From IMG/VR virus record IMGVR_UViG_3300010389_000001, positions 168,534-232,533 of that record: a stretch of DNA of 64,000 nucleotides; one strand, written 5' to 3'. Positions 11,073 through 64,000 of the stretch are shown in pieces; position 1 is the first letter of the stretch; the number at the start of each line of letters is the position of its first letter. The notes under the pieces were generated by a model. That model ran no database searches, was not told the DNA's origin, and saw only the letters and a program-made list of their open reading frames with translations. Made by a program: the position numbers and the translations under genes.

Positions 11073-11079
11073 AATGAAA

Positions 11080-11112
11080 CTACTAATAATAAACAATTTG
11101 ATGACATATAAT
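11080..11112 (+). promoter_or_regulatory. candidate promoter upstream of the sheath gene
   Basis: CTACTAATAATAAA (11080-11093) recurs with 13/14 identity at 51607-51620; TATAAT at 11107-11112; SD GGAGG before ATG 11131. Confidence 0.4.
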
Positions 11113-11130
11113 ATATGCGGAGGATTTTAA

Positions 11131-41500: not shown

Positions 41501-41857
41501 AGGCCGATTACTGCAGATGTCCTTGTGAAAGAAGCCGAGGAGATTCAGGTAGATGTTGCCGGTACAATTTTGATAAATGATGATGCACTAATCAATACGG
41601 ATAGTATTCTGGAAAGTGTATCGAATGCAGTAACAAACCTTCTTTCAACCTCTTCTCTCGGTGGCACAGTCGATTATTCAGATGTTATCGCTACCGCCGC
41701 AGCACAAAATGGTGTTGACTCAGTAAATATATCAATATTTAACGAAACAGAGCTTTCCGGAAGAAGGCCATTTATAAGAGCGCTTGATAATCAATATATT
41801 TCTCCAGGAGTAATATCTTTTGAGGCAGTGTCAAGAAATAAATTTAGAATCAACTAG
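38537..41857 (+). CDS. baseplate J-like wedge protein (enlarged, 1106 aa)
   Basis: Classical N-terminal motifs TSGADLDRLASNFGVTR, IPNGTVVT, AERPGTTGNV, GGINRETDASFRARI, ALLGVDGVVDA; J-like C-terminus (DVIATAAAQNGVDSV). Confidence 0.9.
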   Translation: MANFRSFSEIVSSMIQRLGLSQPNLDTKPGTVSRDVFIDPVADQISRLYSTLSVVSEKQSLATTSGADLDRLASNFGVTRNTGSSANGLVIFATNNLASDISIPNGTVVTARNGASFRTIGNFVMASADKNRYAANATRLRRALNIAGLNSTYVIEVPIQAERPGTTGNVSSLQIVRTNLQATLSVINLVATTGGINRETDASFRARILSVFSGANIGTSLGYRNALLGVDGVVDALVVEPGNSLMLRDGTETIALEDGTSRILNSGTGGKVDIYVLGRKVEPVTESYIFTDFSGTGDISDERNDFILGQGNQDKTRTSEERRVIAFRDGTLPAQPIDSIVSLVGSQSGPLTEAFVDENGVKRGNFELKKDFNEDTGGSPFGFDKISYISNIKKVRAEPIIKGERFSLDIPSFTDIDVLNGVYLDRVESGENADVSSAGSNFIKLKHVPVVKVTSVQNKTTGEIYSVVNQNLENGLNYTGLIEISGRSLPNASNILSVNYTWRQFYDKNIDFSGGDDYQFKDPNAGDVIDWSQTGGIFEEESVISRTADDIDYEVELDYDVNRIISIYTKDIAQATIESITRPDGTTGVGARLSLDDEAVTNIISIRRVSDALELYNTEKADGEFSSRDIYLPSDSQGLIGDEIVVDYNKVEIFDLDGTDGSYYGNVAVLPSEGILEAEGLTELVDSTFLSEDPVYVTYVYDSSSVYPATQLTDLPITGDDNSDTLSSASGSGAAGSNQPIFFDRTSDFSANPINRFGPTYLSVSVSGTTSPGKIKILGTSLNVYTLDIVAGVSISGSKVDLETEIKNALGLNELNEDIGIARIFSVSKLDGNGDPSDLFSKVGHGLSSIEFTVGTASLDQTLNNYEFTIPSNEVNRNITLSSSDRVRVELCVYNRNESEELFFSAPSERTTSNRYGRIASISVSSGFRDNIGGLTGSVSIASLNQPLLSSQYQIDYDFVSPKEGERITVSYNINKLILDATREIERVRPITADVLVKEAEEIQVDVAGTILINDDALINTDSILESVSNAVTNLLSTSSLGGTVDYSDVIATAAAQNGVDSVNISIFNETELSGRRPFIRALDNQYISPGVISFEAVSRNKFRIN

Positions 41858-51651: not shown

Positions 51652-54600
51652 TTGATGTCAAAGAACAGTAGGGAAAATCTGCCTAGGGTTAATTTTTTTG
51701 ACGGACAAAAGGTTACTGAGTCAGATCTTGACACCGAGCAGATTCATCATAGAAATTTGGCTTCAAATATCATCTTGGACTTTCACCAAAATGGTGTAGT
51801 CAGGGATAGCATTTTTGAGAGCAGAGTTCTTTTTGACACGGCATCTCCTGGTGATTTTTCCGCTGAACCAAATGAATCAGAGGTAAAAATCGGTGCTGGC
51901 AAGTTCGACGGTTCTGCAATTTATTTTGATCGCCAGCCGAGCGATACAACCTATGGAAATAGACTTGAGGTAACGGCATCAAACCTTAGCGTAGGAGGAA
52001 GGCTTAAGGCTAAGGTGCTTATTCTCGGATTGAGGTATAGCTCAACCAAGACTCAGGGGGAGCTTGTAACGGAGTTGATTGAGTTTGATTCAAACGGCAC
52101 CAGAATAACTAACAACTACTACACTAGAGTAATCTCTGTCTTTTTCAATAACTTCTCTGGAGGAACAGGCAAGAGCGAGTACGCCGCTATGGCAGAAAGC
52201 GTCCAGACGAATGCAGCCGATGGAAAAATTGTTTTTAGGGAGTCCGAGCCGCTAAGAGTATTTCCAAAGACAGATACCTTCTCTCAGGTTGAATCGCCAA
52301 ACTACGGTCTTGCGTCATTTGTTACATCTTCAACTAGCAGATCAATTGAGGATGAAATAAGGACGGCTCTTGGTACAACATACAACTTTAACGAACTTTA
52401 TTTTGAGCTAGAAGCTTCCAGCAACTTTTTGTTCGAGCCTGATGCAGATCAAACCATCCAGTACGGCCAGAAGTTTCTATCTAAGACAAACAATCTTCAA
52501 AGAATTGATCTACTCTTTTACGTTCAAAGAGACGATTCTGCGCCAGTCGGAAGCGAGTACGATTTCTCCGGTGAGATCGTTGTGTCGGTTCACAAGCTGC
52601 TTGATAACATATCCTGCATAACTGATCCCAACCCCGAGAATCTACTGGACTTTGATCCAAATCCATCCCCGCTAATAGAGGTTGCTTATTCTCAAGAGGA
52701 TTTTGCTGAAATTGGCGTAAAGCTAGACGAAAATCCGCAGATTGTTAGTATCGATCTATCAACTACGCTGATTGCAGATCCAAACATAGAGCCGTCCCTG
52801 GAAGAGGATAAGTTCTATGCCGTACTTGTATCAAGAAGGGGAAATAACAGCCGTGGAACACTCGGAATTCCCGCAGGATATTATAAGCCCTCTAGAAAGA
52901 CCGATAATGGCCAAGATTTAAATCCGCAAGAAAGATTTGGAAGACAAGACTATAGACTTATAGAATACGATCCAACTAACTCATCTTATGTTGACTATCC
53001 AGATTTATCTATGTGGATTGTTGTCCACTCTGATTCCATAGAAATAACTGATGGGCAAGCTTATACGACTGACGGTTTCCCAGTATCAGTACCAAAGACG
53101 GTAGAGTACGTTGGTTCGACCAGAATACCATTCTTTATAAGAAATATTCCCTTAGCCTCTGTTGCAGAGGGAGAGAAGAATTATGTAGTGCTTTACCGTG
53201 AGGATGAATTTGTTGATCCGGCTACTCACCCAAGAACCGGCAACTTTGTTTACACGAATATTAAAGATGCGCCATCAATTGGCGTCCTAACTGAGTCAGA
53301 GCTTGATGAGCAGCTCGATGATTCTCCCCTCATTTTGAGCAGAGTTACTGACAAAAATGCAAGAGATGCACAAGATATAAGCGGAACTGCCGATAAGCCG
53401 GGACTTATAGGTCGAGATTATGCACTATTTATAGATCCGGGATCAGACGTTCTGATACAAAACTTGGTAGGAAGAATTTTCACTCCAGATCTAGATTGCG
53501 AATGCAATTCAAGATACCGAATTACAAGCGTTGAATGCAGCGCCCTCAGACTTGGCGATTTAAACAACGACGGAGAATACACATCCGATGATATCAGCAT
53601 TCTTTTGGATGTCGTTGGCAACACGCTTGGTGCGCAAACAACGGATCGCAGAATTCTGGGTGGAGAACTCGATATCGTAGAGTTTCTGCAATCAGATCTA
53701 AATAATGATGGTACAGTAGACGGCGAAGATATAGAGCTTCTAGAAGATGCGGTCGATGGATATGTAAACTTTGAGGCGGAAGAAGTTATCAAGGTTCTAA
53801 AGGTATCTTTAGAAAACATAACAGATGATAGCAACTTCCCAACTTTATTCAACTCTGCCGATGAAGTTTCTTCGAGCTTATCTGCAAGCACAGATCTTGG
53901 AACAAATACAATAAGCTTTACCGTAAGCAAAGAGCAAGAGGGTCTTGCAATAAGGGCTGGAGACAAAGTCATCGTTCCTGCCACTTCTGTTGACAGTGGT
54001 GAATATTTTGTTGCAACAAAGACCTTTGATGTAGACACCCTAGAGGTAATCCTGACAGTCAAAGATGCTGGCGGAGGAGAGCCCACCTTTGATGGGTCAT
54101 CCGGGTTTGACGTAGTGGTAGTTAGTGGGACTGCAGTAAACATGTTTGCAGATAATTTAAACCTGCTAAAAACTCCATATGCAGAGAAAAACTGGTCTAT
54201 ATCTTATTCCGGAGTTCTTCATCTAGAATCTCAGATAGAAGCTTGCGATCTCAGAAGATTTGTGGAGACAAACCTAATCGAAGAAGTGGCAGGATCATGT
54301 GTCTGCGAAACAGAAGAGTGTATTCAGCCGGATGCATGCAGCCCCATCCTCAGAAATCAAAAGATCCTTCCAAATGACCTCTACATCCCCAATGGCGAAA
54401 TCTATAGCGAGCCTGGCGTTCCCTATCATGGAGATATTGAGTATTCAACAATCTCTATAGCTATGCCGCCAGGAACGATTGAAGATTGTCAAATTGATCT
54501 TTACAATAACTTTATAAAATCCGATGCCGGTGGTTGCAAGACTGCCTCCGGCTATCCCGCTATGGTCTTTTCCGATGGTACCTACGTCGGCTGCGAAGAC

Positions 54601-56217
54601 TCGGGCGGAGAAACCGATCTAACAAAGGGTAGAGTAAAGATAACGCAATGTATAGCCAGCCTTCACGTCGATGCTCTCGTTGACGGCTACGCTGTTGATG
54701 GCTATGCCGATGAAGAAGCAAACAACTTAATTGATGAGATTATAAGCGAAACGTTTGTTGATTATAGCTATCCTACATCAGTTGGCTTCTCTGATTGGAC
54801 GGTGACGGACCCATCTGGAGGAACTTATTTCGTAATAACAACAGATCCTTTCGCAAATACTCCAGCTACCTTCCTGCTGGAAACCACCAGCGCACCAGAA
54901 AGAACTGCAATAATCGATTATCCTGCCGCTCTCGATCCAATTTCCGGCGACTTTGTAATAGATTTTGTAGCATCAAGATCAACGTGGTCAGACTCTGGCT
55001 TAATCGCTGGAAAGGTCAGCTTTTTCGGTGAGGTAGAAATTGTTAATGGTGACGGAACAACCTGTAACCTAAAGATTGGCTGGAGAGTCTCTGCCGGAGA
55101 TTCAACCGAGATGTTCTACTCCGGAACTCTATCTGATACTTCCACGGGAACCGTTCTAAACGACTTTGATAGAGCCATTGTCGCCAAAGATGACCTTGGG
55201 GACGAGATTACATTTAGATTAAGAAGAACAAGCGAAGCTGTTTTCGGAATGTACTATGACGAGACACTTCTAGACGAGGACAGCATTGATGGAAAATTCA
55301 GCAAAATTGGTTCGACGCCAAGCTTCTCACCGGGAGCTGGGGATGCATCCTTGGCCTTTAAGCTATCCCAGCAGCTTACTCCAAATGCCGGCCAGGTATT
55401 CTTTGCAAAGATTCATAGTACAGCGGTCAGGTATAACCTGACGAGCCTTGATAATACTGGTAATAACTTTGTTGAAATCTCCAGAGACTCATCAACAAAT
55501 ATCATTAACAGAGCAACTGTTGGGTTCCCAATTTCTCTAAACCGGAGAACAAACATTGTATCTGCAAGCATGAAGTTTACATTATCTGATGCTTATCCAG
55601 GAGGGGATACTTTTAACCTTATACCCTTAGAAGTTATAAACGCAGATAATCTTGGAACTATAATCGATTATCCTCAAACAATCAACGAGTCACTGATATC
55701 TTCATTTACACCCGGCCCACTTGCCGCTGGGTCTGACATTACAGTTGATGTTACCGGTATGGCTGTATATTTCCTTTCCAGAACCGGGCATCTGCCAGGC
55801 TTCTCTAAGGCGATCGTAGTAGAGCCATCTTCTGGTGCAAACTCAGCTCTTTATATAGATGGAGATATAAGCTTTGACATTGCTTATGAGGATATTACGT
55901 CGGGAGTAATCTTTAAGATTGGAGCTAGCATAGATCCTTCGACTGGGATTGTATCGTTTAGCACAAGAAATATTCTATATGATGCATTAAATAAGGCTAA
56001 TAGAACCGTACTTTCTTTTGGCATTCACCTAAAGAAGTCTGGATTTAGGAATGATGATATTTACATTGGCATTAAGGACCTTGAGAAGCTCGGCATAGGC
56101 ACCTGCAAAGATGAGACTGCTATTGCCGATGAAGATCTTTGCTTCTTTATCACCGGAGATACTGCCACGGGCACCTTTGTTGAGGGCCCGTTCCCCTGTA
56201 ACTTCCATCTCCCATAG
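51652..56217 (+). CDS. baseplate/tail structural protein with a dockerin-like domain
   Basis: N-terminal LPRVNFFDGQKVTESDLDTEQ motif as in contractile baseplate/fibre-attachment proteins; duplicated Ca-binding loops GDLNNDGEYTSDD and SDLNNDGTVDGED (53551-53760); Cys-rich. Confidence 0.7.
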   Translation: MMSKNSRENLPRVNFFDGQKVTESDLDTEQIHHRNLASNIILDFHQNGVVRDSIFESRVLFDTASPGDFSAEPNESEVKIGAGKFDGSAIYFDRQPSDTTYGNRLEVTASNLSVGGRLKAKVLILGLRYSSTKTQGELVTELIEFDSNGTRITNNYYTRVISVFFNNFSGGTGKSEYAAMAESVQTNAADGKIVFRESEPLRVFPKTDTFSQVESPNYGLASFVTSSTSRSIEDEIRTALGTTYNFNELYFELEASSNFLFEPDADQTIQYGQKFLSKTNNLQRIDLLFYVQRDDSAPVGSEYDFSGEIVVSVHKLLDNISCITDPNPENLLDFDPNPSPLIEVAYSQEDFAEIGVKLDENPQIVSIDLSTTLIADPNIEPSLEEDKFYAVLVSRRGNNSRGTLGIPAGYYKPSRKTDNGQDLNPQERFGRQDYRLIEYDPTNSSYVDYPDLSMWIVVHSDSIEITDGQAYTTDGFPVSVPKTVEYVGSTRIPFFIRNIPLASVAEGEKNYVVLYREDEFVDPATHPRTGNFVYTNIKDAPSIGVLTESELDEQLDDSPLILSRVTDKNARDAQDISGTADKPGLIGRDYALFIDPGSDVLIQNLVGRIFTPDLDCECNSRYRITSVECSALRLGDLNNDGEYTSDDISILLDVVGNTLGAQTTDRRILGGELDIVEFLQSDLNNDGTVDGEDIELLEDAVDGYVNFEAEEVIKVLKVSLENITDDSNFPTLFNSADEVSSSLSASTDLGTNTISFTVSKEQEGLAIRAGDKVIVPATSVDSGEYFVATKTFDVDTLEVILTVKDAGGGEPTFDGSSGFDVVVVSGTAVNMFADNLNLLKTPYAEKNWSISYSGVLHLESQIEACDLRRFVETNLIEEVAGSCVCETEECIQPDACSPILRNQKILPNDLYIPNGEIYSEPGVPYHGDIEYSTISIAMPPGTIEDCQIDLYNNFIKSDAGGCKTASGYPAMVFSDGTYVGCEDSGGETDLTKGRVKITQCIASLHVDALVDGYAVDGYADEEANNLIDEIISETFVDYSYPTSVGFSDWTVTDPSGGTYFVITTDPFANTPATFLLETTSAPERTAIIDYPAALDPISGDFVIDFVASRSTWSDSGLIAGKVSFFGEVEIVNGDGTTCNLKIGWRVSAGDSTEMFYSGTLSDTSTGTVLNDFDRAIVAKDDLGDEITFRLRRTSEAVFGMYYDETLLDEDSIDGKFSKIGSTPSFSPGAGDASLAFKLSQQLTPNAGQVFFAKIHSTAVRYNLTSLDNTGNNFVEISRDSSTNIINRATVGFPISLNRRTNIVSASMKFTLSDAYPGGDTFNLIPLEVINADNLGTIIDYPQTINESLISSFTPGPLAAGSDITVDVTGMAVYFLSRTGHLPGFSKAIVVEPSSGANSALYIDGDISFDIAYEDITSGVIFKIGASIDPSTGIVSFSTRNILYDALNKANRTVLSFGIHLKKSGFRNDDIYIGIKDLEKLGIGTCKDETAIADEDLCFFITGDTATGTFVEGPFPCNFHLP

Positions 56218-56640: not shown

Positions 56641-57723
56641 ATGAAAAATGTAAATATTCGCTGCGAGTCTATGCTTGGAACAAGCCATAGCTGGGCTGTT
56701 ACTATGCGGAATCTTTTGGGCAGTCTACATGACCTTGGCTGCGACCTTCATCTGAAAAGCATCAATGGAACCTCACTTTTGCCGGCAAAATTGAGTCGGC
56801 TTATCCGAGATGTAAGTGATCCTGATATAGATATCGCTTATACGCTTCCGAGAAATTTCGAGCATAGGTTTAAGAAGAATGCAAAGCTTAAGTTGGCCAT
56901 CTATAACTATGAAACAAGTATCATGCCCCAGGTCTGGAGAGATTCTATAAAGCATATTGATTATGCCCTGCCCTCTTCACACTTTTCTAAAAAAGTTTTT
57001 GTAGACTCAGGTTGGCCAGAAGATAAATGCATAGTAGTTCCTCACGGAATTAATTTATCTGACTTTAGTAACAAGAAAAAAATAAAGCTAACTAATGATA
57101 GTAGATTTAGATTTTTAAACGTTTCTATACCTCATTATAGAAAAAATTTAGATCGTCTTATTGATGCTTATTACACTGCTTTCACAAATAAAGATGACGT
57201 ATGCCTGGTGCTAAAGACAAGCTTAAAGGCGCCAAAAAATTATTTTGAGTGTGACGTAAAAAAGCAGCTGATGATTGTTCAAAATAAGCATAGAAAGAGA
57301 ACCGATCTGCCCATGATCGAAATTGTTCAAAAAAGGTACGAAAGCATAGTGCCCCTATATAACGCTTGTGATGCCCTTGTGAGCGCCACATCCGCCGAAG
57401 GCTTCGGGCTACCCCTACTAGAGGGTCTGGCGGCAGGAATGATCGTTGTAGCCCCTCGCTTCTCTGGTCATCTTGATTTTCTTACGGACAAGAACTCTGT
57501 TCTTTACGATTATAAGATCGTTGATGCAGAAAAGCGGTATCAATATTGGCGGCCAACGCCGGGGGCTACAACGAGCCTGCCCGATATAAAGGCTCTCGCA
57601 GAGTCGATGCACAAAGTATATCGCAATCACGCTTCTCTCAAGGCTAAGTTTAGAAAAAATGCTCTAGAGACTGCAAAAAGATTTACTTGGGAGAATGCCG
57701 CAAAAAGCATTTTGGAAATATAA
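56641..57723 (+). CDS. GT-B fold glycosyltransferase, GT4-like (1 of 7)
   Basis: SATSAEGFGLPLLEGLAAG (E-x7-E motif), HYRKNLDRLIDAY, terminal RFTWENAA. Confidence 0.9.
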   Translation: MKNVNIRCESMLGTSHSWAVTMRNLLGSLHDLGCDLHLKSINGTSLLPAKLSRLIRDVSDPDIDIAYTLPRNFEHRFKKNAKLKLAIYNYETSIMPQVWRDSIKHIDYALPSSHFSKKVFVDSGWPEDKCIVVPHGINLSDFSNKKKIKLTNDSRFRFLNVSIPHYRKNLDRLIDAYYTAFTNKDDVCLVLKTSLKAPKNYFECDVKKQLMIVQNKHRKRTDLPMIEIVQKRYESIVPLYNACDALVSATSAEGFGLPLLEGLAAGMIVVAPRFSGHLDFLTDKNSVLYDYKIVDAEKRYQYWRPTPGATTSLPDIKALAESMHKVYRNHASLKAKFRKNALETAKRFTWENAAKSILEI

Positions 57724-59213
57724 TGATTGTTCTAGATTTAAAAAATAAAAAAGACTGGAATATGAATGGCGTAAACTGTGAATCTAGCGTAAAAATGAAT
57801 AATAAAGGTTATTTTTATTCATTTATTGATAAGCCTGGTGAATACGAGTTTCGTATATTATCAAAAAATATTTCAGGTAATGGTCTTTTTTATTTAAGGG
57901 TAGTTAGCGAAAAAGATAAAATATTGTTCAATAAAAAGATAAAGTTTACATCAAAAAGCTGGAATGAATCAATCTTTAAAATAAGCTTAAAAGACTTTGG
58001 CAAAAAAGCAAAAGTCCTGATAACAAGAGAGCTTGACGGAATTGGCAGGATAGAAATCGGAAGACTTACCGTTAAGATTTCGGAAGAAGTTCTTCCGAAG
58101 GAATCTAAAAGACAAAAATCTATAGCGGACAATAAGCTTATAAGATGCGAGTCTGCAGTTCGCGCTGCAGTCATTATTCCATATGCAATATACGGCGGAG
58201 CAGAAGTTTATTTAAGAAATTTATTCTGCCACAGACCTGCTGGACTAGAGGTAGATTTTTTATTTTTAAAACCAAATAAGTTATCAGATTATCTAAAAGA
58301 ATATGACTGCTTTAATCTTGGAAGCTTAAGCAAATTGAAGCATCAGCTGATAAAAGAAAATTATGATAAAATTATTTACTACAACAGCAAAAGTGTATAT
58401 TCTTTTATTTTAAATTTAAAGCAGAATAATCTTATTTGCTCCGATTTAATAGAAATATATCATAGCAATTTTAAGTGGTCTGATTCATTATCTTCGCTAA
58501 ACTCAAGGAGCGGCATATCCAAGATAATTAGAGTTGCTGATAATCTGTGCAATGATATTTCCGGAGACTTTAGCCTAAAAACAATACCTGTAAGCATAGA
58601 TGTTGAAAAATATAAGCCGAAAGACTCCCCGATCAAAGAGCTTATTGGGGAAGGAGAAGGGGGCATGCTCTTTGGGATGGTTGCTCGCCTGTCTCCCGAA
58701 AAGAATATATCGTATGCTATCGATTTATTTAAGCGATTGAGCAATCATAGGCTGATTGTAATCGGAGATGGCCCGTTGCGCAATAGTCTCAAAGAAAAAA
58801 TAGTCAAAGAAAAAATTGATAATGTAAAGCTTATTGGTTACAAAGAAAATGTTTATGAATATTATAATTTATTAGATGTTTTTTTGCTTACCTCAAAGTT
58901 TGAAGGAACGCCAATATCTATAATTGAAGCTATGTCGTATAATCTTCCTATATTTACAACGGATGTCGGAGAAATAAGAGCTTCTCTATCTTATGTAGAA
59001 GGAATAGGTTATCTAACCGGGGAGTTGGATGAGGATGCGAAAATGATAAGTGATTTTAAATTTGATGAATCTATAAATTGTAGAGAGTGGGTCCTAAAAA
59101 ATAATAATTCACTTATTAATTCGAGCATGTTCTTTGGCGAGATAATTGGAAATTCTCTAACTTACTCAGAGTTAGATTTATCTTTGCCAATTTTAAGCGG
59201 AGCTTATTTTTAA
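57723..59213 (+). CDS. GT4-like glycosyltransferase with an extra N-terminal beta-sandwich region (2 of 7)
   Basis: YGGAEVY, VARLSPEKNI, LTSKFEGTPISIIEAMSY. Start placed at ATG 57723 (TAATG overlap) rather than the tracked TTG 57687. Confidence 0.85.
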   Translation: MIVLDLKNKKDWNMNGVNCESSVKMNNKGYFYSFIDKPGEYEFRILSKNISGNGLFYLRVVSEKDKILFNKKIKFTSKSWNESIFKISLKDFGKKAKVLITRELDGIGRIEIGRLTVKISEEVLPKESKRQKSIADNKLIRCESAVRAAVIIPYAIYGGAEVYLRNLFCHRPAGLEVDFLFLKPNKLSDYLKEYDCFNLGSLSKLKHQLIKENYDKIIYYNSKSVYSFILNLKQNNLICSDLIEIYHSNFKWSDSLSSLNSRSGISKIIRVADNLCNDISGDFSLKTIPVSIDVEKYKPKDSPIKELIGEGEGGMLFGMVARLSPEKNISYAIDLFKRLSNHRLIVIGDGPLRNSLKEKIVKEKIDNVKLIGYKENVYEYYNLLDVFLLTSKFEGTPISIIEAMSYNLPIFTTDVGEIRASLSYVEGIGYLTGELDEDAKMISDFKFDESINCREWVLKNNNSLINSSMFFGEIIGNSLTYSELDLSLPILSGAYF

Positions 59214-60310
59214 TGACCCAGAGATCAATAAGATTATTCGGTAATCCCCAGGATTTTACAGGATATGGAAACGCCACTCAGGCTATATCCATGGCCCTTG
59301 ATTTATCCGGGATACCGACAAAGTATGTCTTCTCTGGGCCAAATAAGCATTTCTCAAAAAAGCTTCGTCAACATAACTGTAAACCTGATGTTGATTTATA
59401 CATACAAACTCCCCCATTTTCTAGGCACAGGTCTCTGAATTATAGAATTGGGTATTTTTACTGGGAAACGGATAAACTACCGAACTTGTGGGCTAAAGAC
59501 ATAAAGACAAGTCTGGATGAGATATGGGCTCCATGCCAACTTGTAAAAGATGTTTGCTTAAAGGCCGGCTTCAAGGGTCCAATTAAAATAATTCCTACGC
59601 CAGCTCTGAGCCCCACGTCAAGCTCTAAAATACAAATTCCATCTAAATTTAAAAATTTAGTTTTAGATGAAAGCGTATTTAAATTTTATTCAATTTTTCA
59701 ATGGAATGAGCGAAAAGGATATCATAAGTTAATAAAAAGTTATTATGAAGAATTTTCATCTAAAGATAATGTGATCTTGATCCTAAAGGTTAATCCAATT
59801 AACCATAAGCTTCACGGAATGCAAAAAATAAAAGATGATATTTTAAAAATAAGATCGCTAGTTAAGAGGTCAAAAAAAGATTTACCAAAAATCTTCTTGT
59901 CCACAGATCATATCGATCGCCATCTTTTAGACGCTCTACATCATACTTGTGATGCGTTCGTTCTCCCTCACCATGGAGAGGGGTGGGGTATGCCAATACA
60001 TGATGCAATCAACCATAATAATTTTATAATTACAACGAAGTATGGAGGAGTAACTGAATGGCTAAATAATGAGAACTCCTTTATAATAAAGCATTCTATG
60101 ACAGCCGCAAAGTCCATGAATTGGAATCCATGGTATGAGCCAAGTCAAAGGTGGGCAAATCCAAGTGCCAATAGCTTAAAGAGGCAGATGAGAAGCTGCT
60201 ATGAAGACAGAAATAACTTTGATTATAAGAAGGAAAATCTAAATCAAATTACTAATTTATTTACTATAGATAAGTGCGCTCTTAATATTAAGAAAGCATT
60301 AGAAGCGTAG
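59213..60310 (+). CDS. GT4-like glycosyltransferase (3 of 7)
   Basis: TGYGNAT, FYWETDKLP, QWNERKGYHKLI, LPHHGEGWGMPIHDA; paralogous to 56641..57723. Confidence 0.88.
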   Translation: MTQRSIRLFGNPQDFTGYGNATQAISMALDLSGIPTKYVFSGPNKHFSKKLRQHNCKPDVDLYIQTPPFSRHRSLNYRIGYFYWETDKLPNLWAKDIKTSLDEIWAPCQLVKDVCLKAGFKGPIKIIPTPALSPTSSSKIQIPSKFKNLVLDESVFKFYSIFQWNERKGYHKLIKSYYEEFSSKDNVILILKVNPINHKLHGMQKIKDDILKIRSLVKRSKKDLPKIFLSTDHIDRHLLDALHHTCDAFVLPHHGEGWGMPIHDAINHNNFIITTKYGGVTEWLNNENSFIIKHSMTAAKSMNWNPWYEPSQRWANPSANSLKRQMRSCYEDRNNFDYKKENLNQITNLFTIDKCALNIKKALEA

Positions 60311-60316
60311 TTCGTT

Positions 60317-61252
60317 ATGTCAAAAAGATATATTATAGCAGATTGGCTAGTGCATGGCGGTCATCAATATGAGTTTTTTAAAACTGGGCATGACTTCTTC
60401 TGCGCTAACCCGGATGGCTCCGCGCCTGATCCAAAGTCATTGGGCCGACCGATAAATGAAAATGTGAAGTATGTAAAACAAAGCGCTCTTCAGGAAAAGA
60501 GGGTTTCCATTATAATGGTAAGAAGCCCTATTAAGGCAGAAAAGTACAATCGCCTTAGAGGAAAGTACGCCTTTAATAAGCCTCCTGGTATTGCGGTAGT
60601 GCAGACAACAAATCCTTTTGTTCCACCAAGATGGGTGCGATGCGTTGTGTGGAACTCTGAGCATTGTATGAAGTTACATTCTAAAGCAATCGGTTGGGCA
60701 AAGCACTTCTATATTCCGCACGGCTTTGATCCGAATGAATTTAGCAACCTGGGGCTGCAGAGAAATGGCAAAATGCTCGGCGCAGGAAGCCTGTATAGGC
60801 AAAGAGACAATCTATTGGGTTATCGCGAATGGAGGTGGGTTGCAGATCGTCTAAAGGATCGCTGCGCCCTCATAGGGCACGGAAATGACGACCCAGAGTC
60901 AATAGGCAGCCACTCTCTCGATCGCTTGGTAAAGATATATAATGAGCATTCCGTATTTCTAAATACAACAAAACATAGTGCTATGCCGAGAACCAGAGCG
61001 GAGGCCATGATGTGCGGCATGCCGCTTGTTTCTACCGCAAATTATGGTATAGAAAAATATCTTATAAACGGAAAAAATTGTATTATAGCAAATGGCAAGC
61101 AGGATATGCTAGAGGGAGTGAAAAAGATATTGGACTCGCCTTCGATGCAGGAAGATTTTTCTTCGGCCTCAAGAGAAACTGCTTTAAAATACTTTCATAT
61201 AAATGAGTATCTTAATAGATGGAAACAAGTTTTTGAAGAGGCTTTAAAATGA
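60317..61252 (+). CDS. GT-B glycosyltransferase (4 of 7)
   Basis: YIPHGFD, FLNTTKHSAMPRTRAEAMMCGMPLVST, LINGKNCII, RWKQVF. Confidence 0.82.
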   Translation: MSKRYIIADWLVHGGHQYEFFKTGHDFFCANPDGSAPDPKSLGRPINENVKYVKQSALQEKRVSIIMVRSPIKAEKYNRLRGKYAFNKPPGIAVVQTTNPFVPPRWVRCVVWNSEHCMKLHSKAIGWAKHFYIPHGFDPNEFSNLGLQRNGKMLGAGSLYRQRDNLLGYREWRWVADRLKDRCALIGHGNDDPESIGSHSLDRLVKIYNEHSVFLNTTKHSAMPRTRAEAMMCGMPLVSTANYGIEKYLINGKNCIIANGKQDMLEGVKKILDSPSMQEDFSSASRETALKYFHINEYLNRWKQVFEEALK

Positions 61253-62115
61253 AAAAAATACTGCTTTTAACTGACTCTTATAATTGGGCTACTTATTTTA
61301 GAGCAGTAAATCTTAAGCATAATTTAAAAAACTATGATTTTACAATTCTATCCTTCGAAGATAAGCACAAAGTAGATTTTAATGATTTTGATATTGTTTA
61401 CATAACAAATTGGCCAATATACGGATACGTTCGAGATAAAATTTCTAGCAGAAGAGGCTACAAGCTCGTTACCGGAGTATCAAGTCATATAGGCAGGAAA
61501 AGCGCGCGTGAAATGAGAACATTTTTTTCCTCTTTTGACGCTATAGGTCTTTCAAATAACTTTTTAATGAAAGAATTCGCTAGTGCAAAATTTAAAAAGC
61601 TTGTTTATACGCCATTTGGTGTAAATCATAATATCTTTAATAAAAAAACAAATCCGGCGGACTACAAACACGTATTTGGATGGGTTGGCAATAAAGATAG
61701 GCCGGTAAAGCGATATTCCGAAATAAAAGAAGCAATACAAAGCTTGGGCACAACATATGAGCTGAGAACCGTTGGAAGCTCTAACAATTTTTCCAGGGAA
61801 AAGATGGCAAAATTTTACAACTCTATAGGTACCCTTATTTGCTTCAGCGAATCAGAGGGCACTCCGAATCCAGTATTGGAGGCCGCCATGTGTGGGAGGG
61901 CCATAATTTCTACAAATGTAGGCAATGTTCCTCAGCTGATGTCTAAGGTAAGGGAGTTTACTCCAATAGACTCTAGAAAATCTCTTATAGATCAAATTTT
62001 TGAATATAAGAATAAGAAAGACCTTGCATCTTTCGGGTCAGATATAGAGGCGATTGCGAAAAGGGAGTGGACCTGGGAGAGGCAATCAAAAAGATTCGTA
62101 AAATTATTCGAGTAA
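61249..62115 (+). CDS. GT4-like glycosyltransferase (5 of 7)
   Basis: TPFGVNHNIF, FGWVGN, CFSESEGTPNPVLEAAMCGRAIISTNVG, WTWERQ. Confidence 0.88.
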   Translation: MKKILLLTDSYNWATYFRAVNLKHNLKNYDFTILSFEDKHKVDFNDFDIVYITNWPIYGYVRDKISSRRGYKLVTGVSSHIGRKSAREMRTFFSSFDAIGLSNNFLMKEFASAKFKKLVYTPFGVNHNIFNKKTNPADYKHVFGWVGNKDRPVKRYSEIKEAIQSLGTTYELRTVGSSNNFSREKMAKFYNSIGTLICFSESEGTPNPVLEAAMCGRAIISTNVGNVPQLMSKVREFTPIDSRKSLIDQIFEYKNKKDLASFGSDIEAIAKREWTWERQSKRFVKLFE

Positions 62116-62118
62116 ATC

Positions 62119-63141
62119 ATGCAAAGAATTTTAATTACAAGTACTCAATACCCCTATTATGGCGGTGCGGCAACAAACGCATATGCTTTAATAAAGCATT
62201 TTAGAAAGCTAGGCATAAAAGTATGTGGTACATTTTTCGAAGAGAAAAGCGTAAATGCTGATCCAGACTCTATTGGAGGAGTATTTCTTGCCTCAAAGAA
62301 AGATGTGCAAAGTTGTAAAAAAAAGATAAATCAGTATCTAAAAGGAGAGCCCGATGTTGTGCTTTGCAAAAATTACGTTGCGCCAGTCTTGTCCAGGAAG
62401 ATTTATCCAAATTCAAAAATATTTTACTTAGCTTCTGGCTGTCCCCACATGATGGAGCTATCATCAAAAGATATATCTGCAATTAAATACTTAAAATCAT
62501 CTAGGTCTATAGAATTTGCTGCTGAAAAAAGCGCGATAAAATCTTCTGACTTTATTGTTCCAAATAGCGAAATTGGAAGAAGATTGCTGCAAAAACATTA
62601 TGGCAATTCAAAGAAAATTTTAAACTCATTCAATACATCGCTTGAAATAAATAGAAAGCCCAGATCCATTGAGTTTGATCGTAGAAATTATGACATAGGC
62701 TTTATATGCTCTAATTTTAATAGAACAGTAAAGAACTCAAGATTAGCTTTATCTATTTTTAGTAATTTTAAATCAAATAAAAAAATTGCCATAGGAAATA
62801 ACTCATCTGCTTTTAAATCAGTAGACAGAACTACAGTTATGAACTCTAAAGATAATGACTTTATCATAAGGACTCTTTCACAAACAAAATTGATTATCTG
62901 CCCATCTTATTACGATGCATCACCAAATATCGTGCGAGAAGCTATTTTATGCGGATGCAATGTTTTGGTTTCAAAAAACTGCGGATGGAGTGAGGCTTAC
63001 CCAAGAACAAGCGTGTGTGAAGATATCTATGATAAAAAAGAGTGGGTCGCTAAGGCGAAATTTTTAGTTAAACGAAATGTAAAATATGACTACAAATATA
63101 ATGCAGATATAGTCAGATATCTTGAGGGTGCATTAAAATGA
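62119..63141 (+). CDS. GT-B glycosyltransferase (6 of 7)
   Basis: PYYGGAATN, VPNSE, RTVKNSRL, ICPSYYDASPNIVREAILCGC. Confidence 0.8.
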   Translation: MQRILITSTQYPYYGGAATNAYALIKHFRKLGIKVCGTFFEEKSVNADPDSIGGVFLASKKDVQSCKKKINQYLKGEPDVVLCKNYVAPVLSRKIYPNSKIFYLASGCPHMMELSSKDISAIKYLKSSRSIEFAAEKSAIKSSDFIVPNSEIGRRLLQKHYGNSKKILNSFNTSLEINRKPRSIEFDRRNYDIGFICSNFNRTVKNSRLALSIFSNFKSNKKIAIGNNSSAFKSVDRTTVMNSKDNDFIIRTLSQTKLIICPSYYDASPNIVREAILCGCNVLVSKNCGWSEAYPRTSVCEDIYDKKEWVAKAKFLVKRNVKYDYKYNADIVRYLEGALK

Positions 63142-63952
63142 AAAGAGTTTTATTTATAGTTGATAAGCCGGGCTGGGCCTATGATGATGCAGCTCAAAAT
63201 TGGAAAAGACTACTTTGCAAAGAATATAAAATAGATATTCTACATCTGGCTGAATATGATGGCGTTCGCCCAGATCATAGATTTTACGGACTAATTAAAG
63301 AATATCAAGATTGTGCAATAAATAATCAATCTGCAGATTTAAAAGATTTAATATCAGAAAAAAATTTGTTTTTATGCAAAGGAATTAAGGCAGAGCCAGT
63401 TTTTGATCATAATAATTATGATATAATTTATTTATTTTATCACAGAGCACTATGTGATTCAAGGCTTCTTGCTACACCAATCCCACTTGAAAAAGTTGTA
63501 ATTGCTATAAATAATGAAAAGTGGACAGATCTTGGCGCAAAAAAAGAATATGATACATATATGAAGGGAGTGGGCGGCATTTCTGTATGCAACTCTTTTG
63601 TTGAAAAATCTTTCAGTGGATTAAACCCAAATATTTTTAGAGTCTCTCAATCTATTAACAAAGATGTATTTTTCAAAATAAAAGATAATGCCAAAAGTAA
63701 TCGTTTTATAGCCGGCTGGTCTGGCAATTATAAAAATCCTTTAAAAAATTTTGAACTAATAAAAGAAGCTATTTCAAATACTAAAGCTAGATTTACCTAT
63801 GCGAATAACCTTTCCAGAAAAGAGCTTAACGTATGGTATAATAACATAAACTGCGTGGTATGCGCTAGTGTGTCTGAGGGCGGCCCCCTTATGCTCTTGG
63901 AAGCCGGAGCAGTGGGGCTTCCTGTGATAACCTCTAAAGTTGGGTTGGCTAG
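63138..63952 (+). CDS. GT4-like glycosyltransferase, 3'-truncated (7 of 7; absent from the ORF track)
   Basis: ATGA overlap with the previous gene; my translation reads MKRVLFIVDKPGWAYDD...AGWSGNYKNPLKNF...CASVSEGGPLMLLEAGAVGLPVITSKVGL and then runs into adapter sequence. Confidence 0.85.
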
Positions 63953-64000
63953 CTGTCTCTTATACACATCTCCGAGCCCACGAGACGTAGAGGAATCTCG
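63953..64000 (+). other. Illumina Nextera adapter read-through (technical artefact)
   Basis: CTGTCTCTTATACACATCT (Tn5 mosaic end) + CCGAGCCCACGAGAC + index GTAGAGGA (N712) + ATCTCG (start of the P7 side). Confidence 0.98.

What the first reader, a model, noticed from the sequence alone, without database searches (positions are those of the whole stretch)
56641..63952. At least seven tandem GT-B glycosyltransferases directly after the baseplate genes: candidate virion glycosylation system
Seen: seven co-oriented, mostly overlapping GT4-like genes (the array is cut by the contig end), with paralog pairs (56641/59213 and 61249/63138), no TM segments, and no flippase, polymerase or DNA-modification genes within the window. 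Knowledge: phage GTs modify DNA, host O-antigen (usually with membrane GtrA/B-type partners) or virion proteins (some mycobacteriophages; giant eukaryotic viruses). Inference: a soluble stepwise pathway building an oligosaccharide on tail or capsid proteins, larger than is usual for phages.
Basis: partly seen in the sequence, partly recalled or inferred. Interest (0 to 1): 0.72.

Follow-up and report, generated by a model that had tools for sequence, protein, structure and literature searches.

The report
Huge-phage glycosyltransferase array beside tail genes
A huge uncultured aquatic phage carries at least eight sugar-adding enzyme genes directly after its tail-tip genes; four of them are conserved across a wide clade of 200–420 kb phages, and they most likely coat virion proteins with strain-specific glycans, although the target is not proven.

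Summary
Seven co-oriented, abutting GT4-type (GT-B) glycosyltransferase genes lie at window 56641–63952, with two old paralog pairs and no predicted membrane segments.

New facts:
- The window is the 3' end of a 232.5-kb viral contig. The contig stops in a Nextera adapter, and an eighth GT fragment sits at the contig start.
- GT1–GT4 are a conserved core. In dozens of independent contigs they follow the same two giant genes (about 3,200 and 1,510 aa).
- GT5–GT7 and everything further downstream vary. In relatives this stretch is an island of up to about 38 kb making Kdo and nonulosonic-acid, amino, methylated, acetylated and sulfated sugars.
- Five lineage genomes, one 94% complete, showed no priming transferase, flippase, polymerase, thymidylate-synthase-type hydroxymethylase or C5 DNA methyltransferase.
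- The closest cellular relatives of GT1 and GT3 are domains of giant multi-GT proteins. These lie within 10 kb of a flagellin gene in 16 of 38 well-flanked bacterial loci.

Verdict: virion-protein glycosylation is the best-supported reading (about 0.45), but the acceptor is inferred, not shown. Host-surface remodelling remains a serious rival. This is a new variant of a known kind, of moderately high interest.

The parts
38097..38528 (+). Baseplate protein, gp25-like (143 aa). Marks the start of the conserved tail-tip block.
   Evidence: phrog_2669 baseplate protein, E 1e-13. 55% identical ortholog in G001.
38537..41857 (+). Baseplate wedge subunit, gp6-like (1,106 aa).
   Evidence: phrog_6, E 9e-43. 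51% identical ortholog in G001.
41866..51603 (+). Giant protein of 3,245 aa with a ConA/Laminin-G-like domain. Presumed distal tail or fibre protein and a candidate glycan acceptor (inferred).
   Evidence: Pfam Laminin_G_3 at residues 2144-2233. Homologs of 3,132-3,480 aa lie in the same position in the related contigs examined, but are shorter in L041 (1,245 aa called) and split into two frames in L032.
51652..56217 (+). Protein of 1,521 aa with no family match, conserved immediately upstream of the GT core. Presumed structural protein and a candidate acceptor (inferred).
   Evidence: No Pfam or PHROG hit. Homolog lies directly upstream of GT1 in 53 of 57 metagenome loci. No homolog in 50,697 GenBank phage records.
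56242..56598 (+). Small ORF of 118 aa, function unknown. This slot is variable.
   Evidence: No family hit. A 114-aa ORF occupies the same slot in L045. Other relatives carry HNH or LAGLIDADG ORFs or nothing here.
56641..57723 (+). GT1, a GT4-type glycosyltransferase (360 aa). It is the most conserved core member.
   Evidence: PF00534 39.7 bits, PF20706 GT4-conflict 28.1 bits, phrog_2170 E 2e-35. EX7E motif at residue 253. 50-79% identical orthologs. Related to flagellin-locus multi-GT proteins.
57723..59213 (+). GT2 (496 aa from the ATG at 57723; the ORF opens at TTG 57687). An N-terminal CBM-like beta-sandwich is followed by a GT-B catalytic part.
   Evidence: PF00534 86.7 bits. AF2 model with pLDDT 86.5. 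GT4 structures top the Foldseek hits. Residues 1-121 resemble the CBM_4_9 fold, TM about 0.8. 178 homologs, many on 200-420 kb contigs.
59213..60310 (+). GT3 (365 aa), an old paralog of GT1. It carries a conserved EX7D variant of the motif.
   Evidence: PF00534 32.3 bits. 23% identical to GT1, E 1e-20. EGWGMPIHD is conserved in 9 orthologs. Hits the same bacterial family as GT1.
60317..61252 (+). GT4 (311 aa), of the CgeB/Glyco_trans_1_2 type. It is the last core member.
   Evidence: PF13524 45.9 bits, PF00534 41.3 bits. Orthologs at 36-71% identity follow GT3 in 35 of 41 loci.
61249..62115 (+). GT5 (288 aa), part of the sub-lineage-specific module.
   Evidence: PF13692 34.7 bits. EX7E at residue 203. 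Present in 8 of 30 well-flanked loci.
62119..63141 (+). GT6 (340 aa), the weakest GT call. Part of the sub-lineage-specific module.
   Evidence: PF00534 24.8 bits (cut-off 26.4), PF13439 E 1e-3, phrog_2170 E 1e-8 over residues 4-297. Present in 5 of 30 loci.
63138..63952 (+). GT7, truncated (271 aa held). It is a paralog of GT5, and full-length orthologs are 342-354 aa.
   Evidence: PF00534 40.2 bits. EX7E at residue 247. 29% identical to GT5. Full-length genes in L134 and G004.
63953..64000 (.). Nextera transposase adapter plus index. This is an artefact, not phage sequence.
   Evidence: The sequence reads CTGTCTCTTATACACATCTCCGAGCCCACGAGAC + GTAGAGGA. The reverse adapter sits at genome positions 1-44.

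Best explanation
The seven genes are the start of a phage-encoded, cytoplasmic, stepwise glycan-assembly system.

Four conserved GT-B enzymes (GT1-GT4) form a core that is genetically tied to the two giant tail-module proteins just upstream. GT5-GT7, and the genes the contig end hides, are a variable tailoring module.

The most likely mechanism has three steps. First, during late gene expression the soluble enzymes transfer sugars from nucleotide-sugar donors directly onto hydroxyl groups of newly made virion proteins. The giant fibre-like proteins are the prime suspects as acceptors. Second, GT1 and GT3 act on the protein or on the first sugars. Third, GT2, which carries a CBM-like glycan-binding domain, GT4 and the variable GTs extend and diversify the chain.

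The result would be a lineage-specific glycan coat on the virion surface.

Shown: gene identities, GT-B fold, motifs, conserved synteny, the variable island in relatives, absence of the lipid-carrier and DNA-modification genes searched for, and homology of GT1 and GT3 to flagellin-locus enzymes.

Inferred: the acceptor, the order of action, the donors and the timing.
For: (1) GT identity. Pfam and PHROG matches for all seven genes. The GT2 model has pLDDT 86.5 with GT4 enzymes (BshA, HepE, MshA, PimB') as its best structural matches. EX7E is present in GT1, GT2, GT5, GT7 and the eighth fragment, and a conserved EX7D in GT3.

(2) Coupling to the tail genes. The order ~3,200 aa - ~1,510 aa - GT1-GT2-GT3-GT4 recurs in IMG/VR, ENA, Logan, NCBI and Tara contigs, down to 32% GT2 identity. 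In 74 metagenome loci the 1,521-aa homolog lies directly upstream of GT1 in 53 of 57, GT2 follows in 51 of 55, GT3 in 44 of 47 and GT4 in 35 of 41. The genes share a strand with gaps of -4 to +48 nt, and terminator-like sites are no more frequent than chance.

(3) No lipid-linked route. No Bac_transf, WecA-type, Wzx or Wzy/ligase family was found in G000, G005 (94% complete), G002, G004 or G006, while the controls rang. No hydrophobic segments were found.

(4) No known route to a glycosylatable DNA base. No thymidylate-synthase family and no C5 DNA methyltransferase were found. T4-type DNA glucosyltransferases are not among the top 50 structural hits.

(5) Closest cellular relatives. The exhaustive search with GT1 found giant multi-GT proteins of 1,000-5,000 aa carrying up to 6 matched GT1-like stretches. 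One lies next to flagellin, FliS and five TPR-GT2 genes. Another lies next to FliT. A third lies beside a NeuB/DegT cluster and CheA. Of 80 bacterial loci of this family, 24 have a flagellin gene in the held flank, and 16 of the 38 loci of at least 18 kb do. GT1 and GT3 align full-length to all of these loci, whereas the other GTs hardly do.

(6) Clade-specific sugar islands. Relatives carry variable clusters downstream. This parallels the fibril-glycosylation clusters of Megavirinae, which hold 6-33 genes and are clade-specific (PMC10117803).

(7) Best solved-structure relative of the GT1 profile. It is the chlorovirus glycosyltransferase B736L, E 2e-6. The best viral structural neighbours of GT2 are giant-virus GT1-family proteins.

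(8) Precedent. Phage virion glycosylation by phage GTs is established for mycobacteriophages Che8, Corndog and Myrna (Freeman 2023, as summarised in PMC12363180 and PMC12619734).
Against: - No direct evidence names the acceptor.
- GT4 enzymes act on lipids, polymers, small molecules and proteins alike, and peripheral-membrane GT4s such as WaaG and PimA also lack membrane segments.
- The structural proteins show no Ser/Thr-rich tails.
- The window's GTs carry no TPR or other recognisable protein-binding domain.
- The phage encodes no flagellin-like protein.
- The flagellin statistic comes from loci chosen by similarity to one flagellin-linked protein and has no matched control. In the tree, GT1 and GT3 sit on long stems rather than inside a flagellin-linked subclade.
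- The end of a structural module is a common place for accessory genes, so position alone is weak evidence.
- Kdo and CMP-sugar genes in relatives also fit LPS or capsule work, or DNA hypermodification (bioRxiv 10.1101/2023.12.21.572611).
- The GT1+GT3 complex prediction gave no answer.
- The host is unknown.
Confidence: 0.45

Rival explanations
1. Host envelope remodelling. The soluble or peripheral GTs use the host's own lipid carriers, flippases and ligases to change LPS, capsule or another surface polysaccharide of the infected cell. This would block superinfecting phages or stop progeny from sticking to debris. The variable island would supply the unusual donor sugars.
For: - This is the published reading of jumbo-phage and cyanophage GT clusters (PMC7824862; PMC12801897, which reports 13 GTs plus KdsA and KdsB in S-SCSM2R).
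- Relatives encode KdsA-, KdsB- and KdsD-like enzymes, and Kdo is an LPS and capsule sugar.
- GT2's sequence and structure neighbours include WbnH, LPS galactosyltransferase, PglA and capsule polymerase Cps3D.
- Lack of membrane segments does not exclude peripheral-membrane GT4s.
- Strain-level variability fits an arms race at the cell surface.
Against: - No priming transferase, flippase or polymerase/ligase was found in any of five lineage genomes.
- A four-GT core held next to the tail genes at 32% identity looks like a core virion-linked function, not an accessory gene.
- A lytic-type huge phage spending up to about 38 kb on the surface of a doomed host needs a special argument.
- The nearest cellular kin of GT1 and GT3 are found at flagellin loci rather than O-antigen loci.
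Confidence: 0.25
2. Glycosylation of host proteins. The enzymes modify host flagellin, pili, S-layer or other host proteins during infection, to alter motility, adhesion or receptor availability.
For: GT1 and GT3 are homologous to domains of giant enzymes encoded next to flagellin, FliS and FliT genes. No acceptor-like flagellin is encoded by the phage itself.
Against: - The core's conserved neighbours are phage structural genes, not host-takeover genes.
- The presumed late expression leaves little time for a host-directed effect.
- No TPR flagellin-binding domain is present in the window's GTs.
Confidence: 0.1
3. DNA hypermodification. The GTs build oligosaccharides on modified bases of the phage genome to escape restriction enzymes and CRISPR.
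For: Phage GT-B and GT-A enzymes install mono- and di-saccharides, including Kdo and heptose, on 5hmC, with cytidylyltransferases encoded nearby (bioRxiv 10.1101/2023.12.21.572611). Relatives encode CMP-sugar synthetases.
Against: - No thymidylate-synthase-type hydroxymethylase and no C5 methyltransferase were found in five lineage genomes, including the 94%-complete one. The Tet_JBP search was empty, but its control was silent, so it is uninformative.
- GT2 groups with GT4 enzymes, not with T4 beta-glucosyltransferase.
- The array sits in the tail module, not in a replication or nucleotide-metabolism block.
Confidence: 0.07
4. Assembly artefact. The GT block is host DNA wrongly joined to a phage contig.
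For: The contig ends in adapter sequence on both sides. GC falls to 0.32-0.36 in GT2, GT3 and GT5-GT7, against 0.40 for the window.
Against: - The identical junction and gene order occur in dozens of independent assemblies from different samples and pipelines.
- The array lies internally in contigs of 200-395 kb.
- No relative of GT1 was found in 185,579 species genomes with the phage-type patterns.
- In three independent runs, related short contigs cover both sides of the junction at similar depth.
Confidence: 0.01

Closest known systems
Mycobacteriophage virion glycosylation (Che8, Corndog, Myrna; Freeman et al. 2023, cited through PMC12363180 and PMC12619734)
   Same: Phage-encoded soluble glycosyltransferases, with no export machinery, are proposed to decorate the phage's own structural proteins in the cytoplasm.
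   Different: Those phages have a few GTs acting on the C-termini of capsid and tail-tube proteins. Here there are at least eight GTs, plus islands of tens of genes in relatives. No sequence relation was detected: tblastn with GT1 found Streptomyces, Arthrobacter and Microcystis phages but no mycobacteriophage. No Ser/Thr-rich tails were seen. There is no experimental proof here.
Fibril glycosylation gene clusters of Megavirinae giant viruses (PMC10117803; review PMC9614988)
   Same: Virus-encoded clusters combine nucleotide-sugar pathways for rare bacterial-type sugars with several GTs. Their composition is clade-specific, and their products coat surface fibres. The best viral structural neighbours of GT2 are giant-virus GT1-family proteins.
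   Different: Those are eukaryotic viruses of another realm, with no gene-level orthology shown. Here a fixed four-GT core sits beside tail genes of a tailed phage, and the glycan and its carrier are unknown.
Bacterial flagellin glycosylation islands (Maf, FlmG, GmaR-type systems; bioRxiv 10.1101/2022.03.25.485807, PMC11339370)
   Same: Glycosylation is cytoplasmic and acts directly on a filament protein before export. Nonulosonic-acid and Kdo donor pathways are encoded alongside. GT1 and GT3 are homologous (27-32% identity, full length) to GT-B domains of giant enzymes encoded next to flagellin genes.
   Different: The characterised flagellin transferases (Maf, FlmG, GmaR) belong to other families or carry TPR domains. 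The giant multi-GT proteins found here are themselves uncharacterised. The phage has no flagellin and its GTs are separate single-domain genes.
Jumbo cyanophage 'cell-wall/LPS' gene sets (S-SCSM2R, S-SCSM1, P-SSM2: PMC12801897; Iyer et al. 2021: PMC7824862)
   Same: These are large aquatic phages with many GTs (up to 13), epimerases, KdsA and KdsB. The sets vary between related phages and their function is untested.
   Different: Those sets are read as host-surface modification and involve other GT families (GT2, 10, 11, 25). No conserved four-GT4 core beside giant tail genes has been described, and no homolog of GT2 or the 1,521-aa protein exists in GenBank phage records.
Moraphages (PMC12619734)
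   Same: This is an uncultured aquatic jumbo-phage lineage of 200-307 kb in which four separate glycosyltransferase orthogroups belong to the core genome. Their function was left open between DNA, host and virion targets.
   Different: Identity with the present lineage could not be tested because the SPIRE contigs are not held. A family A DNA polymerase VOG is reported at 28 occurrences in the moraphage/ERM phage set, but PF00476 was absent from four genomes of this lineage. The portal here is nearest Bacillus phage G, at 32.5% identity. That paper does not describe the synteny with tail genes or the variable island.
Phage DNA sugar hypermodification (T4 alpha/beta-GT; 5mYOX/ThyS-linked GTs, bioRxiv 10.1101/2023.12.21.572611)
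   Same: Phage-encoded GT-B enzymes, sometimes sequential, work with nearby nucleotide-sugar genes including cytidylyltransferases and Kdo.
   Different: No hydroxymethylation route was found. The fold neighbours are GT4 enzymes, not T4 beta-GT. The location is the tail module.

Membership tests
GT4 / GT-B glycosyltransferases (Pfam Glycos_transf_1 clan) | The C-terminal Rossmann domain matches PF00534 or PF13692 above the curated cut-off | tested here: met
   Six of seven genes score above the cut-off. GT6 scores 24.8 against 26.4 but is supported by PF13439 and phrog_2170.
GT4 / GT-B glycosyltransferases (Pfam Glycos_transf_1 clan) | Two-Rossmann-domain GT-B fold | tested here: met
   Tested for GT2 only. 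The AF2 model has pLDDT 86.5 and the top Foldseek hits are BshA, HepE, MshA and PimB', with TM by target 0.6-0.73. The other GTs were not modelled.
GT4 / GT-B glycosyltransferases (Pfam Glycos_transf_1 clan) | EX7E nucleotide-sugar motif | tested here: inconclusive
   Present in GT1, GT2, GT5, GT7 and the eighth fragment. GT3 has a conserved EX7D. No aligned motif was found in GT4 or GT6.
GT4 / GT-B glycosyltransferases (Pfam Glycos_transf_1 clan) | Glycosyl transfer activity | not testable with these tools
   Needs an enzyme assay.
Phage virion-protein glycosylation systems (Che8/Corndog/Myrna type) | Glycans covalently bound to virion proteins, dependent on the phage GTs | not testable with these tools
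   Needs virions, mass spectrometry and GT knock-outs. The lineage is uncultured.
Phage virion-protein glycosylation systems (Che8/Corndog/Myrna type) | Homology of the GTs to the mycobacteriophage enzymes | tested here: not met
   tblastn with GT1 against 50,697 phage records gave 85 records, none from Mycobacterium phages. GT2 gave 13 partial hits, none mycobacterial.
Lipid-linked surface polysaccharide pathways (Wzx/Wzy type) | Phage-encoded priming phosphoglycosyl transferase (Bac_transf or WecA type) | tested here: not met
   PF02397 and PF00953 are absent from five lineage genomes, while the controls rang.
Lipid-linked surface polysaccharide pathways (Wzx/Wzy type) | Flippase and polymerase/ligase | tested here: not met
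   PF01943 and PF04932 are absent from five lineage genomes. ABC-transporter routes and GT-C enzymes were not searched.
DNA sugar hypermodification systems | A route to 5-hydroxymethyl pyrimidine (ThyS-type hydroxymethylase, or C5-MT plus 5mYOX) | tested here: not met
   PF00303 and PF00145 are absent. PF12851 is absent, but its control was silent, so that part is uninformative.
DNA sugar hypermodification systems | GT resembling T4 beta- or alpha-glucosyltransferase | tested here: not met
   No T4 DNA GT appears among the top 50 PDB matches of the GT2 model. The other GTs were not modelled.
Flagellin-locus giant multi-GT enzymes (uncharacterised bacterial family; Pfam GT4-conflict signal) | Full-length homology of the GT-B domain | tested here: met
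   GT1 and GT3 align over about 360 aa at 27-32% identity (E down to 3e-40) to all 84 bacterial loci. GT1 matches PF20706 at 28.1 bits against a cut-off of 26. Exhaustive search.
Flagellin-locus giant multi-GT enzymes (uncharacterised bacterial family; Pfam GT4-conflict signal) | Fusion of several GT domains, often with TPR, in one giant protein encoded near flagellin | tested here: not met
   The window's GTs are separate single-domain genes without TPR. No flagellin-like ORF occurs in G000, G001 or the G004 loci held.
Megavirinae-type virion glycosylation clusters | One cluster holding both nucleotide-sugar pathways and GTs, with clade-specific content | tested here: met
   Met in relatives. 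In this window only the GTs are visible because the contig ends.
Megavirinae-type virion glycosylation clusters | Products attached to surface fibrils | not testable with these tools
   Needs virion chemistry.
Moraphages (PMC12619734) | Core VOG set, e.g. a family A DNA polymerase VOG reported at 28 occurrences in the moraphage/ERM phage set | tested here: not met
   PF00476 is absent from G000, G005 (94% complete), G002 and G006. PhoH is present in two. A direct comparison with moraphage genomes was not possible.

The most novel reading that the evidence does not exclude
A widespread, uncultured clade of 200-420 kb aquatic phages builds a virus-encoded 'glycocalyx'. A fixed four-enzyme core, descended from the same family as bacterial flagellin-glycosylating giants, primes the phage's own giant tail fibres. 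A hypervariable island then adds Kdo or nonulosonic-acid sugars and sulfated, methylated and acetylated sugars in a strain-specific pattern. This would be the tailed-phage counterpart of Megavirinae fibril glycosylation, with roles in host recognition, camouflage or particle stability.
Probability: 0.3. Interest if true: 0.8.

Novelty: new variant of a known kind. Interest (0 to 1): 0.62.

Why it matters
Virion glycosylation by a phage's own enzymes is proven only for a few actinophages with small GT sets. Complex virus-made glycans are otherwise known only from giant eukaryotic viruses.

If this module glycosylates the virion, a globally distributed group of huge aquatic phages makes elaborate, strain-specific glycans. 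That would bear on host range, grazing and particle fate in the sea, and on the immune visibility of phages. It would also supply a pool of soluble GTs, sulfotransferases and rare-sugar pathways for glyco-engineering.

The conserved four-GT core next to two giant proteins gives a concrete, testable enzyme-substrate hypothesis for an uncultured lineage. The link to flagellin-locus multi-GT proteins also flags an uncharacterised bacterial enzyme family.

Tried and rejected
- **DNA similarity to GenBank phages:** no match. tblastn with the 1,521-aa protein found nothing, and GT2 gave only partial hits.
- **Scans that found nothing:** the GT7 fragment against viral contigs, and the first genome-contig scan with phage GT1 patterns.
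- **Ser/Thr-rich acceptor tails:** none stood out in the structural proteins.
- **Atlas search with the 1,521-aa protein:** scores under 0.7, uninformative.
- **Promoter and terminator scan:** counts at chance level, so it shows only that no strong terminator lies inside the block. A recurrent ACTAAT-like motif upstream of structural genes was seen but not tested.
- **GT3 as an inactive partner (GtfB-like):** rejected, because it keeps a conservative EX7D.
- **GT2 as a TarM/SdgB/GtfA-type enzyme with an inserted DUF1975 domain:** suggested by length and sequence hits, rejected by the model, which puts a separate N-terminal beta-sandwich before the GT-B part.
- **GT1+GT3 complex prediction:** 'no answer', not evidence either way.
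- **Read laying:** only short contigs of related strains mapped, and none bridged the junction.
- **Tree of GT1, GT3 and the bacterial domains:** the phage clades sit on long stems and are not nested in a flagellin-linked subclade.
- **Attempts to use L048's genome as a search centre:** failed because the genome is not held.
- **Tet_JBP search:** uninformative because its control was silent.
- **Moraphage membership:** could not be tested directly.

Full report
**1. What is there**

The window is the last 64 kb of a 232,533-bp IMG/VR viral contig (G000:C1:168534-232533). The record is linear and CheckV estimates it at 68% complete. Nearly all genes lie on the + strand. The phage identity is clear:
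- a portal whose nearest named relative is Bacillus phage G, at 32.5% identity;
- a prohead protease domain;
- a gp25-like baseplate protein at 38097-38528 and a gp6-like wedge protein at 38537-41857.

Two giant ORFs follow. The first is 3,245 aa and has a Laminin_G_3 domain. The second is 1,521 aa and matches no family. A 118-aa ORF comes next.

From 56641 to 63952 lie seven co-oriented genes that abut or overlap by -4 to +6 nt. All seven match Pfam Glycos_transf_1 / Glyco_trans_1_4 and PHROG 2170. Six score above the curated cut-off, and GT6 falls just below it but has supporting matches. GT1/GT3 and GT5/GT7 are old paralog pairs, at 23% and 29% identity, and no hydrophobic segments are present.

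**2. The contig end**

Positions 63953-64000 are Nextera adapter plus index, and the first 44 bases of the contig are the other adapter. Directly after that first adapter, the contig start encodes the C-terminal 135 aa of an eighth GT.

This fragment is 61% identical to a GT that lies about 38 kb downstream of GT1 in a related phage. The two contig ends therefore probably face each other across a gap that holds more glycan genes.

**3. Related phages: a fixed core and a variable island**

A scan of viral contigs with GT1 and its ortholog found eight related loci. These include contigs of 212-317 kb, one of them 94% complete. All show the order giant protein - ~1,520-aa protein - GT1-GT2-GT3-GT4, at 50-62% GT1 identity.

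A homolog search with GT2 gave 178 proteins, many on contigs of 200-420 kb from JGI, ENA, Logan, NCBI and Tara. Seven of those contexts were inspected, down to 32% GT2 identity, and all repeat the same order (orthology).

In 74 metagenome loci:

| Feature | Loci with it / loci with enough flank |
|---|---|
| 1,521-aa homolog directly upstream of GT1 | 53 / 57 |
| GT2 next | 51 / 55 |
| GT3 after | 44 / 47 |
| GT4 after | 35 / 41 |
| GT5 | 8 / 30 |
| GT6 | 5 / 30 |
| GT7 | 7 / 30 |

GT1-GT4 are thus a conserved core tied to the giant genes, and GT5-GT7 are a sub-lineage module.

The closest relative (L134, 64-81% identity over GT1-GT6) shows what probably follows the window: a full-length GT7 of 342 aa, a 381-aa gene, a 294-aa gene and two GT29-like genes.

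**4. What lies downstream in relatives**

- *G004 (seven GT4s, like the window).* Downstream are two GT29 sialyltransferase-like genes, methyltransferases, a DHDPS-like gene, a KdsA-like DAHP_synth_1, a CMP-sugar synthetase, three sulfotransferases, WbqC, a GH130/43-like gene, GNAT, DegT, an RmlA-like nucleotidyltransferase, a 4,6-dehydratase, GSCFA and a UDP-sugar dehydrogenase.
- *G001/G005.* Downstream are a GT2-like gene, two hexapeptide acyltransferases, a methyltransferase, AsnB-like amidotransferases, DegT, an oxidoreductase, two sulfotransferases, a dehydrogenase, an epimerase, phosphomannomutase, GlmS, GDP-mannose dehydratase, a mannose-6-P-isomerase-like cupin and two more GTs. Unrelated genes are interspersed.
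- *More distant members.* These carry NeuB, CTP_transf_3, KdsA-like, SIS and GT8 genes.

None of these sugar-nucleotide genes has a homolog on the 232-kb G000 contig, apart from an AsnB-like gene. In G000 they are therefore either missing or in the unassembled part.

**5. Tests that separate the possible targets**

*Lipid-linked polysaccharide routes.* Bac_transf, WecA-type, Wzx and Wzy/ligase families are absent from G000, G005, G002, G004 and G006, with positive controls.

*DNA modification.* No thymidylate-synthase family and no C5 DNA methyltransferase were found. The Tet_JBP search was empty but had a silent control. This matters because phage GTs can put Kdo, heptose and other sugars on 5hmC (bioRxiv 10.1101/2023.12.21.572611).

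*Fold.* The GT2 model (pLDDT 86.5) has an N-terminal beta-sandwich at residues 1-120 and then a GT-B part.
- The GT-B part is closest to the GT4 enzymes BshA, HepE, MshA and PimB'. No T4 DNA glucosyltransferase is among the top 50 hits.
- Its best viral neighbours are giant-virus GT1-family proteins.
- The N-terminal domain resembles CBM_4_9 carbohydrate-binding modules, TM about 0.8. This fits an enzyme that holds a glycan while extending it. That last point is inference.

*Motifs.* EX7E is present in GT1, GT2, GT5, GT7 and the eighth fragment. GT3 has a conserved EX7D.

**6. Nearest cellular relatives**

An exhaustive profile-free search with GT1 found 15,131 relatives. Beyond the phage orthologs, the best are giant proteins of 1,000-5,000 aa with up to six matched GT1-like stretches. 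Their contexts are:
- P0130 lies next to a flagellin gene, FliS, five TPR-GT2 genes and a radical-SAM/methyltransferase giant.
- P0129 contains TPR and AsnB-like parts and lies next to FliT.
- P0146 lies beside a NeuB/DegT/epimerase cluster, with CheA nearby.
- P0271 has sugar genes nearby but no flagellar gene within 10 kb.

A scan of species genomes with this family returned 80 loci, mostly Verrucomicrobiota, Desulfobacterota and Planctomycetota. A flagellin gene lies within the held flank in 24 of the 80, and in 16 of the 38 loci of at least 18 kb. From general knowledge, a random 20-kb window holds a flagellin gene in roughly 1-2% of cases. That background figure is an estimate, not a measured control.

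GT1 and GT3 align full-length to all of these loci (27-32% identity, E down to 3e-40), while the other GTs hardly do.

Three caveats apply. The loci were ranked by likeness to a flagellin-linked member. In the tree, GT1 and GT3 sit on long stems and are not nested in a flagellin-linked subclade. The phage has no flagellin-like gene.

The best solved-structure relative of the GT1 profile is chlorovirus glycosyltransferase B736L, at E 2e-6.

**7. Interpretation**

The favoured reading is direct cytoplasmic glycosylation of virion proteins. The two giant proteins upstream are the most likely carriers. The core enzymes would start the glycan and the variable module would diversify it.

The steps that are shown and those that are inferred are listed under Best explanation. 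Confidence is about 0.45.

The main rival is host-envelope remodelling, which is the published view for jumbo cyanophage GT sets (PMC7824862, PMC12801897). Kdo genes and LPS-type structural neighbours of GT2 support it. The absence of any carrier or export gene, and the deep conservation of the core next to the tail genes, weigh against it.

Host-protein glycosylation and DNA hypermodification are minor rivals. A mis-join is excluded by the recurrence of the junction in independent assemblies.

**8. Relation to the literature**

- Mycobacteriophage virion glycosylation is the closest proven mechanism, but its enzymes are unrelated by sequence.
- Megavirinae fibril glycosylation clusters (6-33 genes, clade-specific; PMC10117803) are the closest analogue in design.
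- The moraphage paper (PMC12619734) reports four GT orthogroups in the core genome of another, or perhaps overlapping, aquatic jumbo lineage and leaves their role open. The absence of a family A polymerase here argues that the lineages differ, but this could not be tested directly.
- No GenBank phage record carries GT2 or the 1,521-aa protein.
- Related sequences occur in marine, sediment, aquaculture and freshwater metagenomes.

**9. Limits**

- The host is unknown.
- The membrane-segment test was crude.
- Only GT2 was modelled.
- ABC-transporter routes and GT-C enzymes were not searched.
- The flagellin statistic lacks a matched control.
- The complex prediction gave no answer.
- Read laying gave only short, non-bridging contigs.

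Noticed in passing
window 63953-64000; genome contig positions 1-44: Both ends of the 232,533-bp contig are Nextera adapter sequence. The 3' end also carries the index GTAGAGGA. The adapter translates into spurious peptide at the end of GT7.
   Followed up: yes
G000 contig start, L010:45-452 (+): This is the C-terminal 135 aa of an eighth GT4-type gene. It is 61% identical to a GT lying about 38 kb downstream of GT1 in G001, so the contig ends probably face each other across a gap.
   Followed up: partly
L022:8233-10656 (-) in G001; 825-aa frames in G002 and G003: An 807-aa protein joins a GT4 domain to a tubulin/FtsZ GTPase domain. It is conserved in several relatives at the far edge of the sugar island.
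   Followed up: no
L029:19792-20451 and L035:1552-2166 (G004); L134:9562-10891: These are pairs of short GT29 (sialyltransferase-family) genes, next to KdsA-like and CMP-sugar synthetase genes. The family is mainly eukaryotic and viral.
   Followed up: partly
L021:16245-16775 and 17716-18183 (G001); L035:4644-5333 and 10477-11151 (G004): Sulfotransferase genes of three Pfam families lie inside the phage sugar islands. This suggests sulfated glycans.
   Followed up: no
L031:13683-16982; L045:12610-15948: An ORF of 1,099-1,112 aa with no family match is inserted between GT3 and GT4 in two related phages.
   Followed up: no
L021:10185-13571 (-) in G001: A 1,128-aa protein has a PARP catalytic domain and a NUDIX domain. 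It lies inside the island.
   Followed up: no
L039:2351-3085; L042:7903-8589: LAGLIDADG- or HNH-type homing-endonuclease-like ORFs are inserted between the giant genes and GT1 in some relatives.
   Followed up: no
L012:16650-17026 and seven tRNA genes in L011/L012 (G000): The phage encodes a tmRNA (tag ANNNYHYNSVALAA) and tRNAs for Arg, Leu, Met, Lys, Pro, Thr and Ala.
   Followed up: no
L022:15625-16017 and 15031-15357 (G001): NifU-like and IscA-like iron-sulfur assembly genes sit in the island, next to a Fis-type HTH protein.
   Followed up: no
L021:4102-6579 (-) in G001; L041:8067-8843: An 825-aa protein has a weak DUF5591 (archaeosine-TGT-like) match. A 258-aa homolog sits between the 1,508-aa gene and GT1 in L041. 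A link to 7-deazaguanine DNA chemistry was not examined.
   Followed up: no
L025, L026 (contigs of 46 kb, 82% identical at the 1,521-aa protein): Two assemblies of close relatives break 144 bases after the 1,521-aa gene, just before the GT array. This fits strain-level variability or a coverage change at that point.
   Followed up: no
G000 intergenic regions upstream of g190, g203, g213, g218, g221, g225 and g230: A recurrent ACTAAT-type AT-rich motif lies upstream of several structural genes and may be a late promoter. It is not present before GT1.
   Followed up: no
L048, L050, L051 and 80 bacterial loci L052-L131: Giant bacterial proteins of 1,000-5,000 aa carry up to six matched GT4 stretches, often with GT2, TPR, methyltransferase or AsnB parts. 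They are frequently encoded beside flagellin genes. This enzyme family appears to be uncharacterised.
   Followed up: partly
L010:9342-10265 (G000): A protein combines an ArdC-like anti-restriction N-domain with a zincin metallopeptidase.
   Followed up: no
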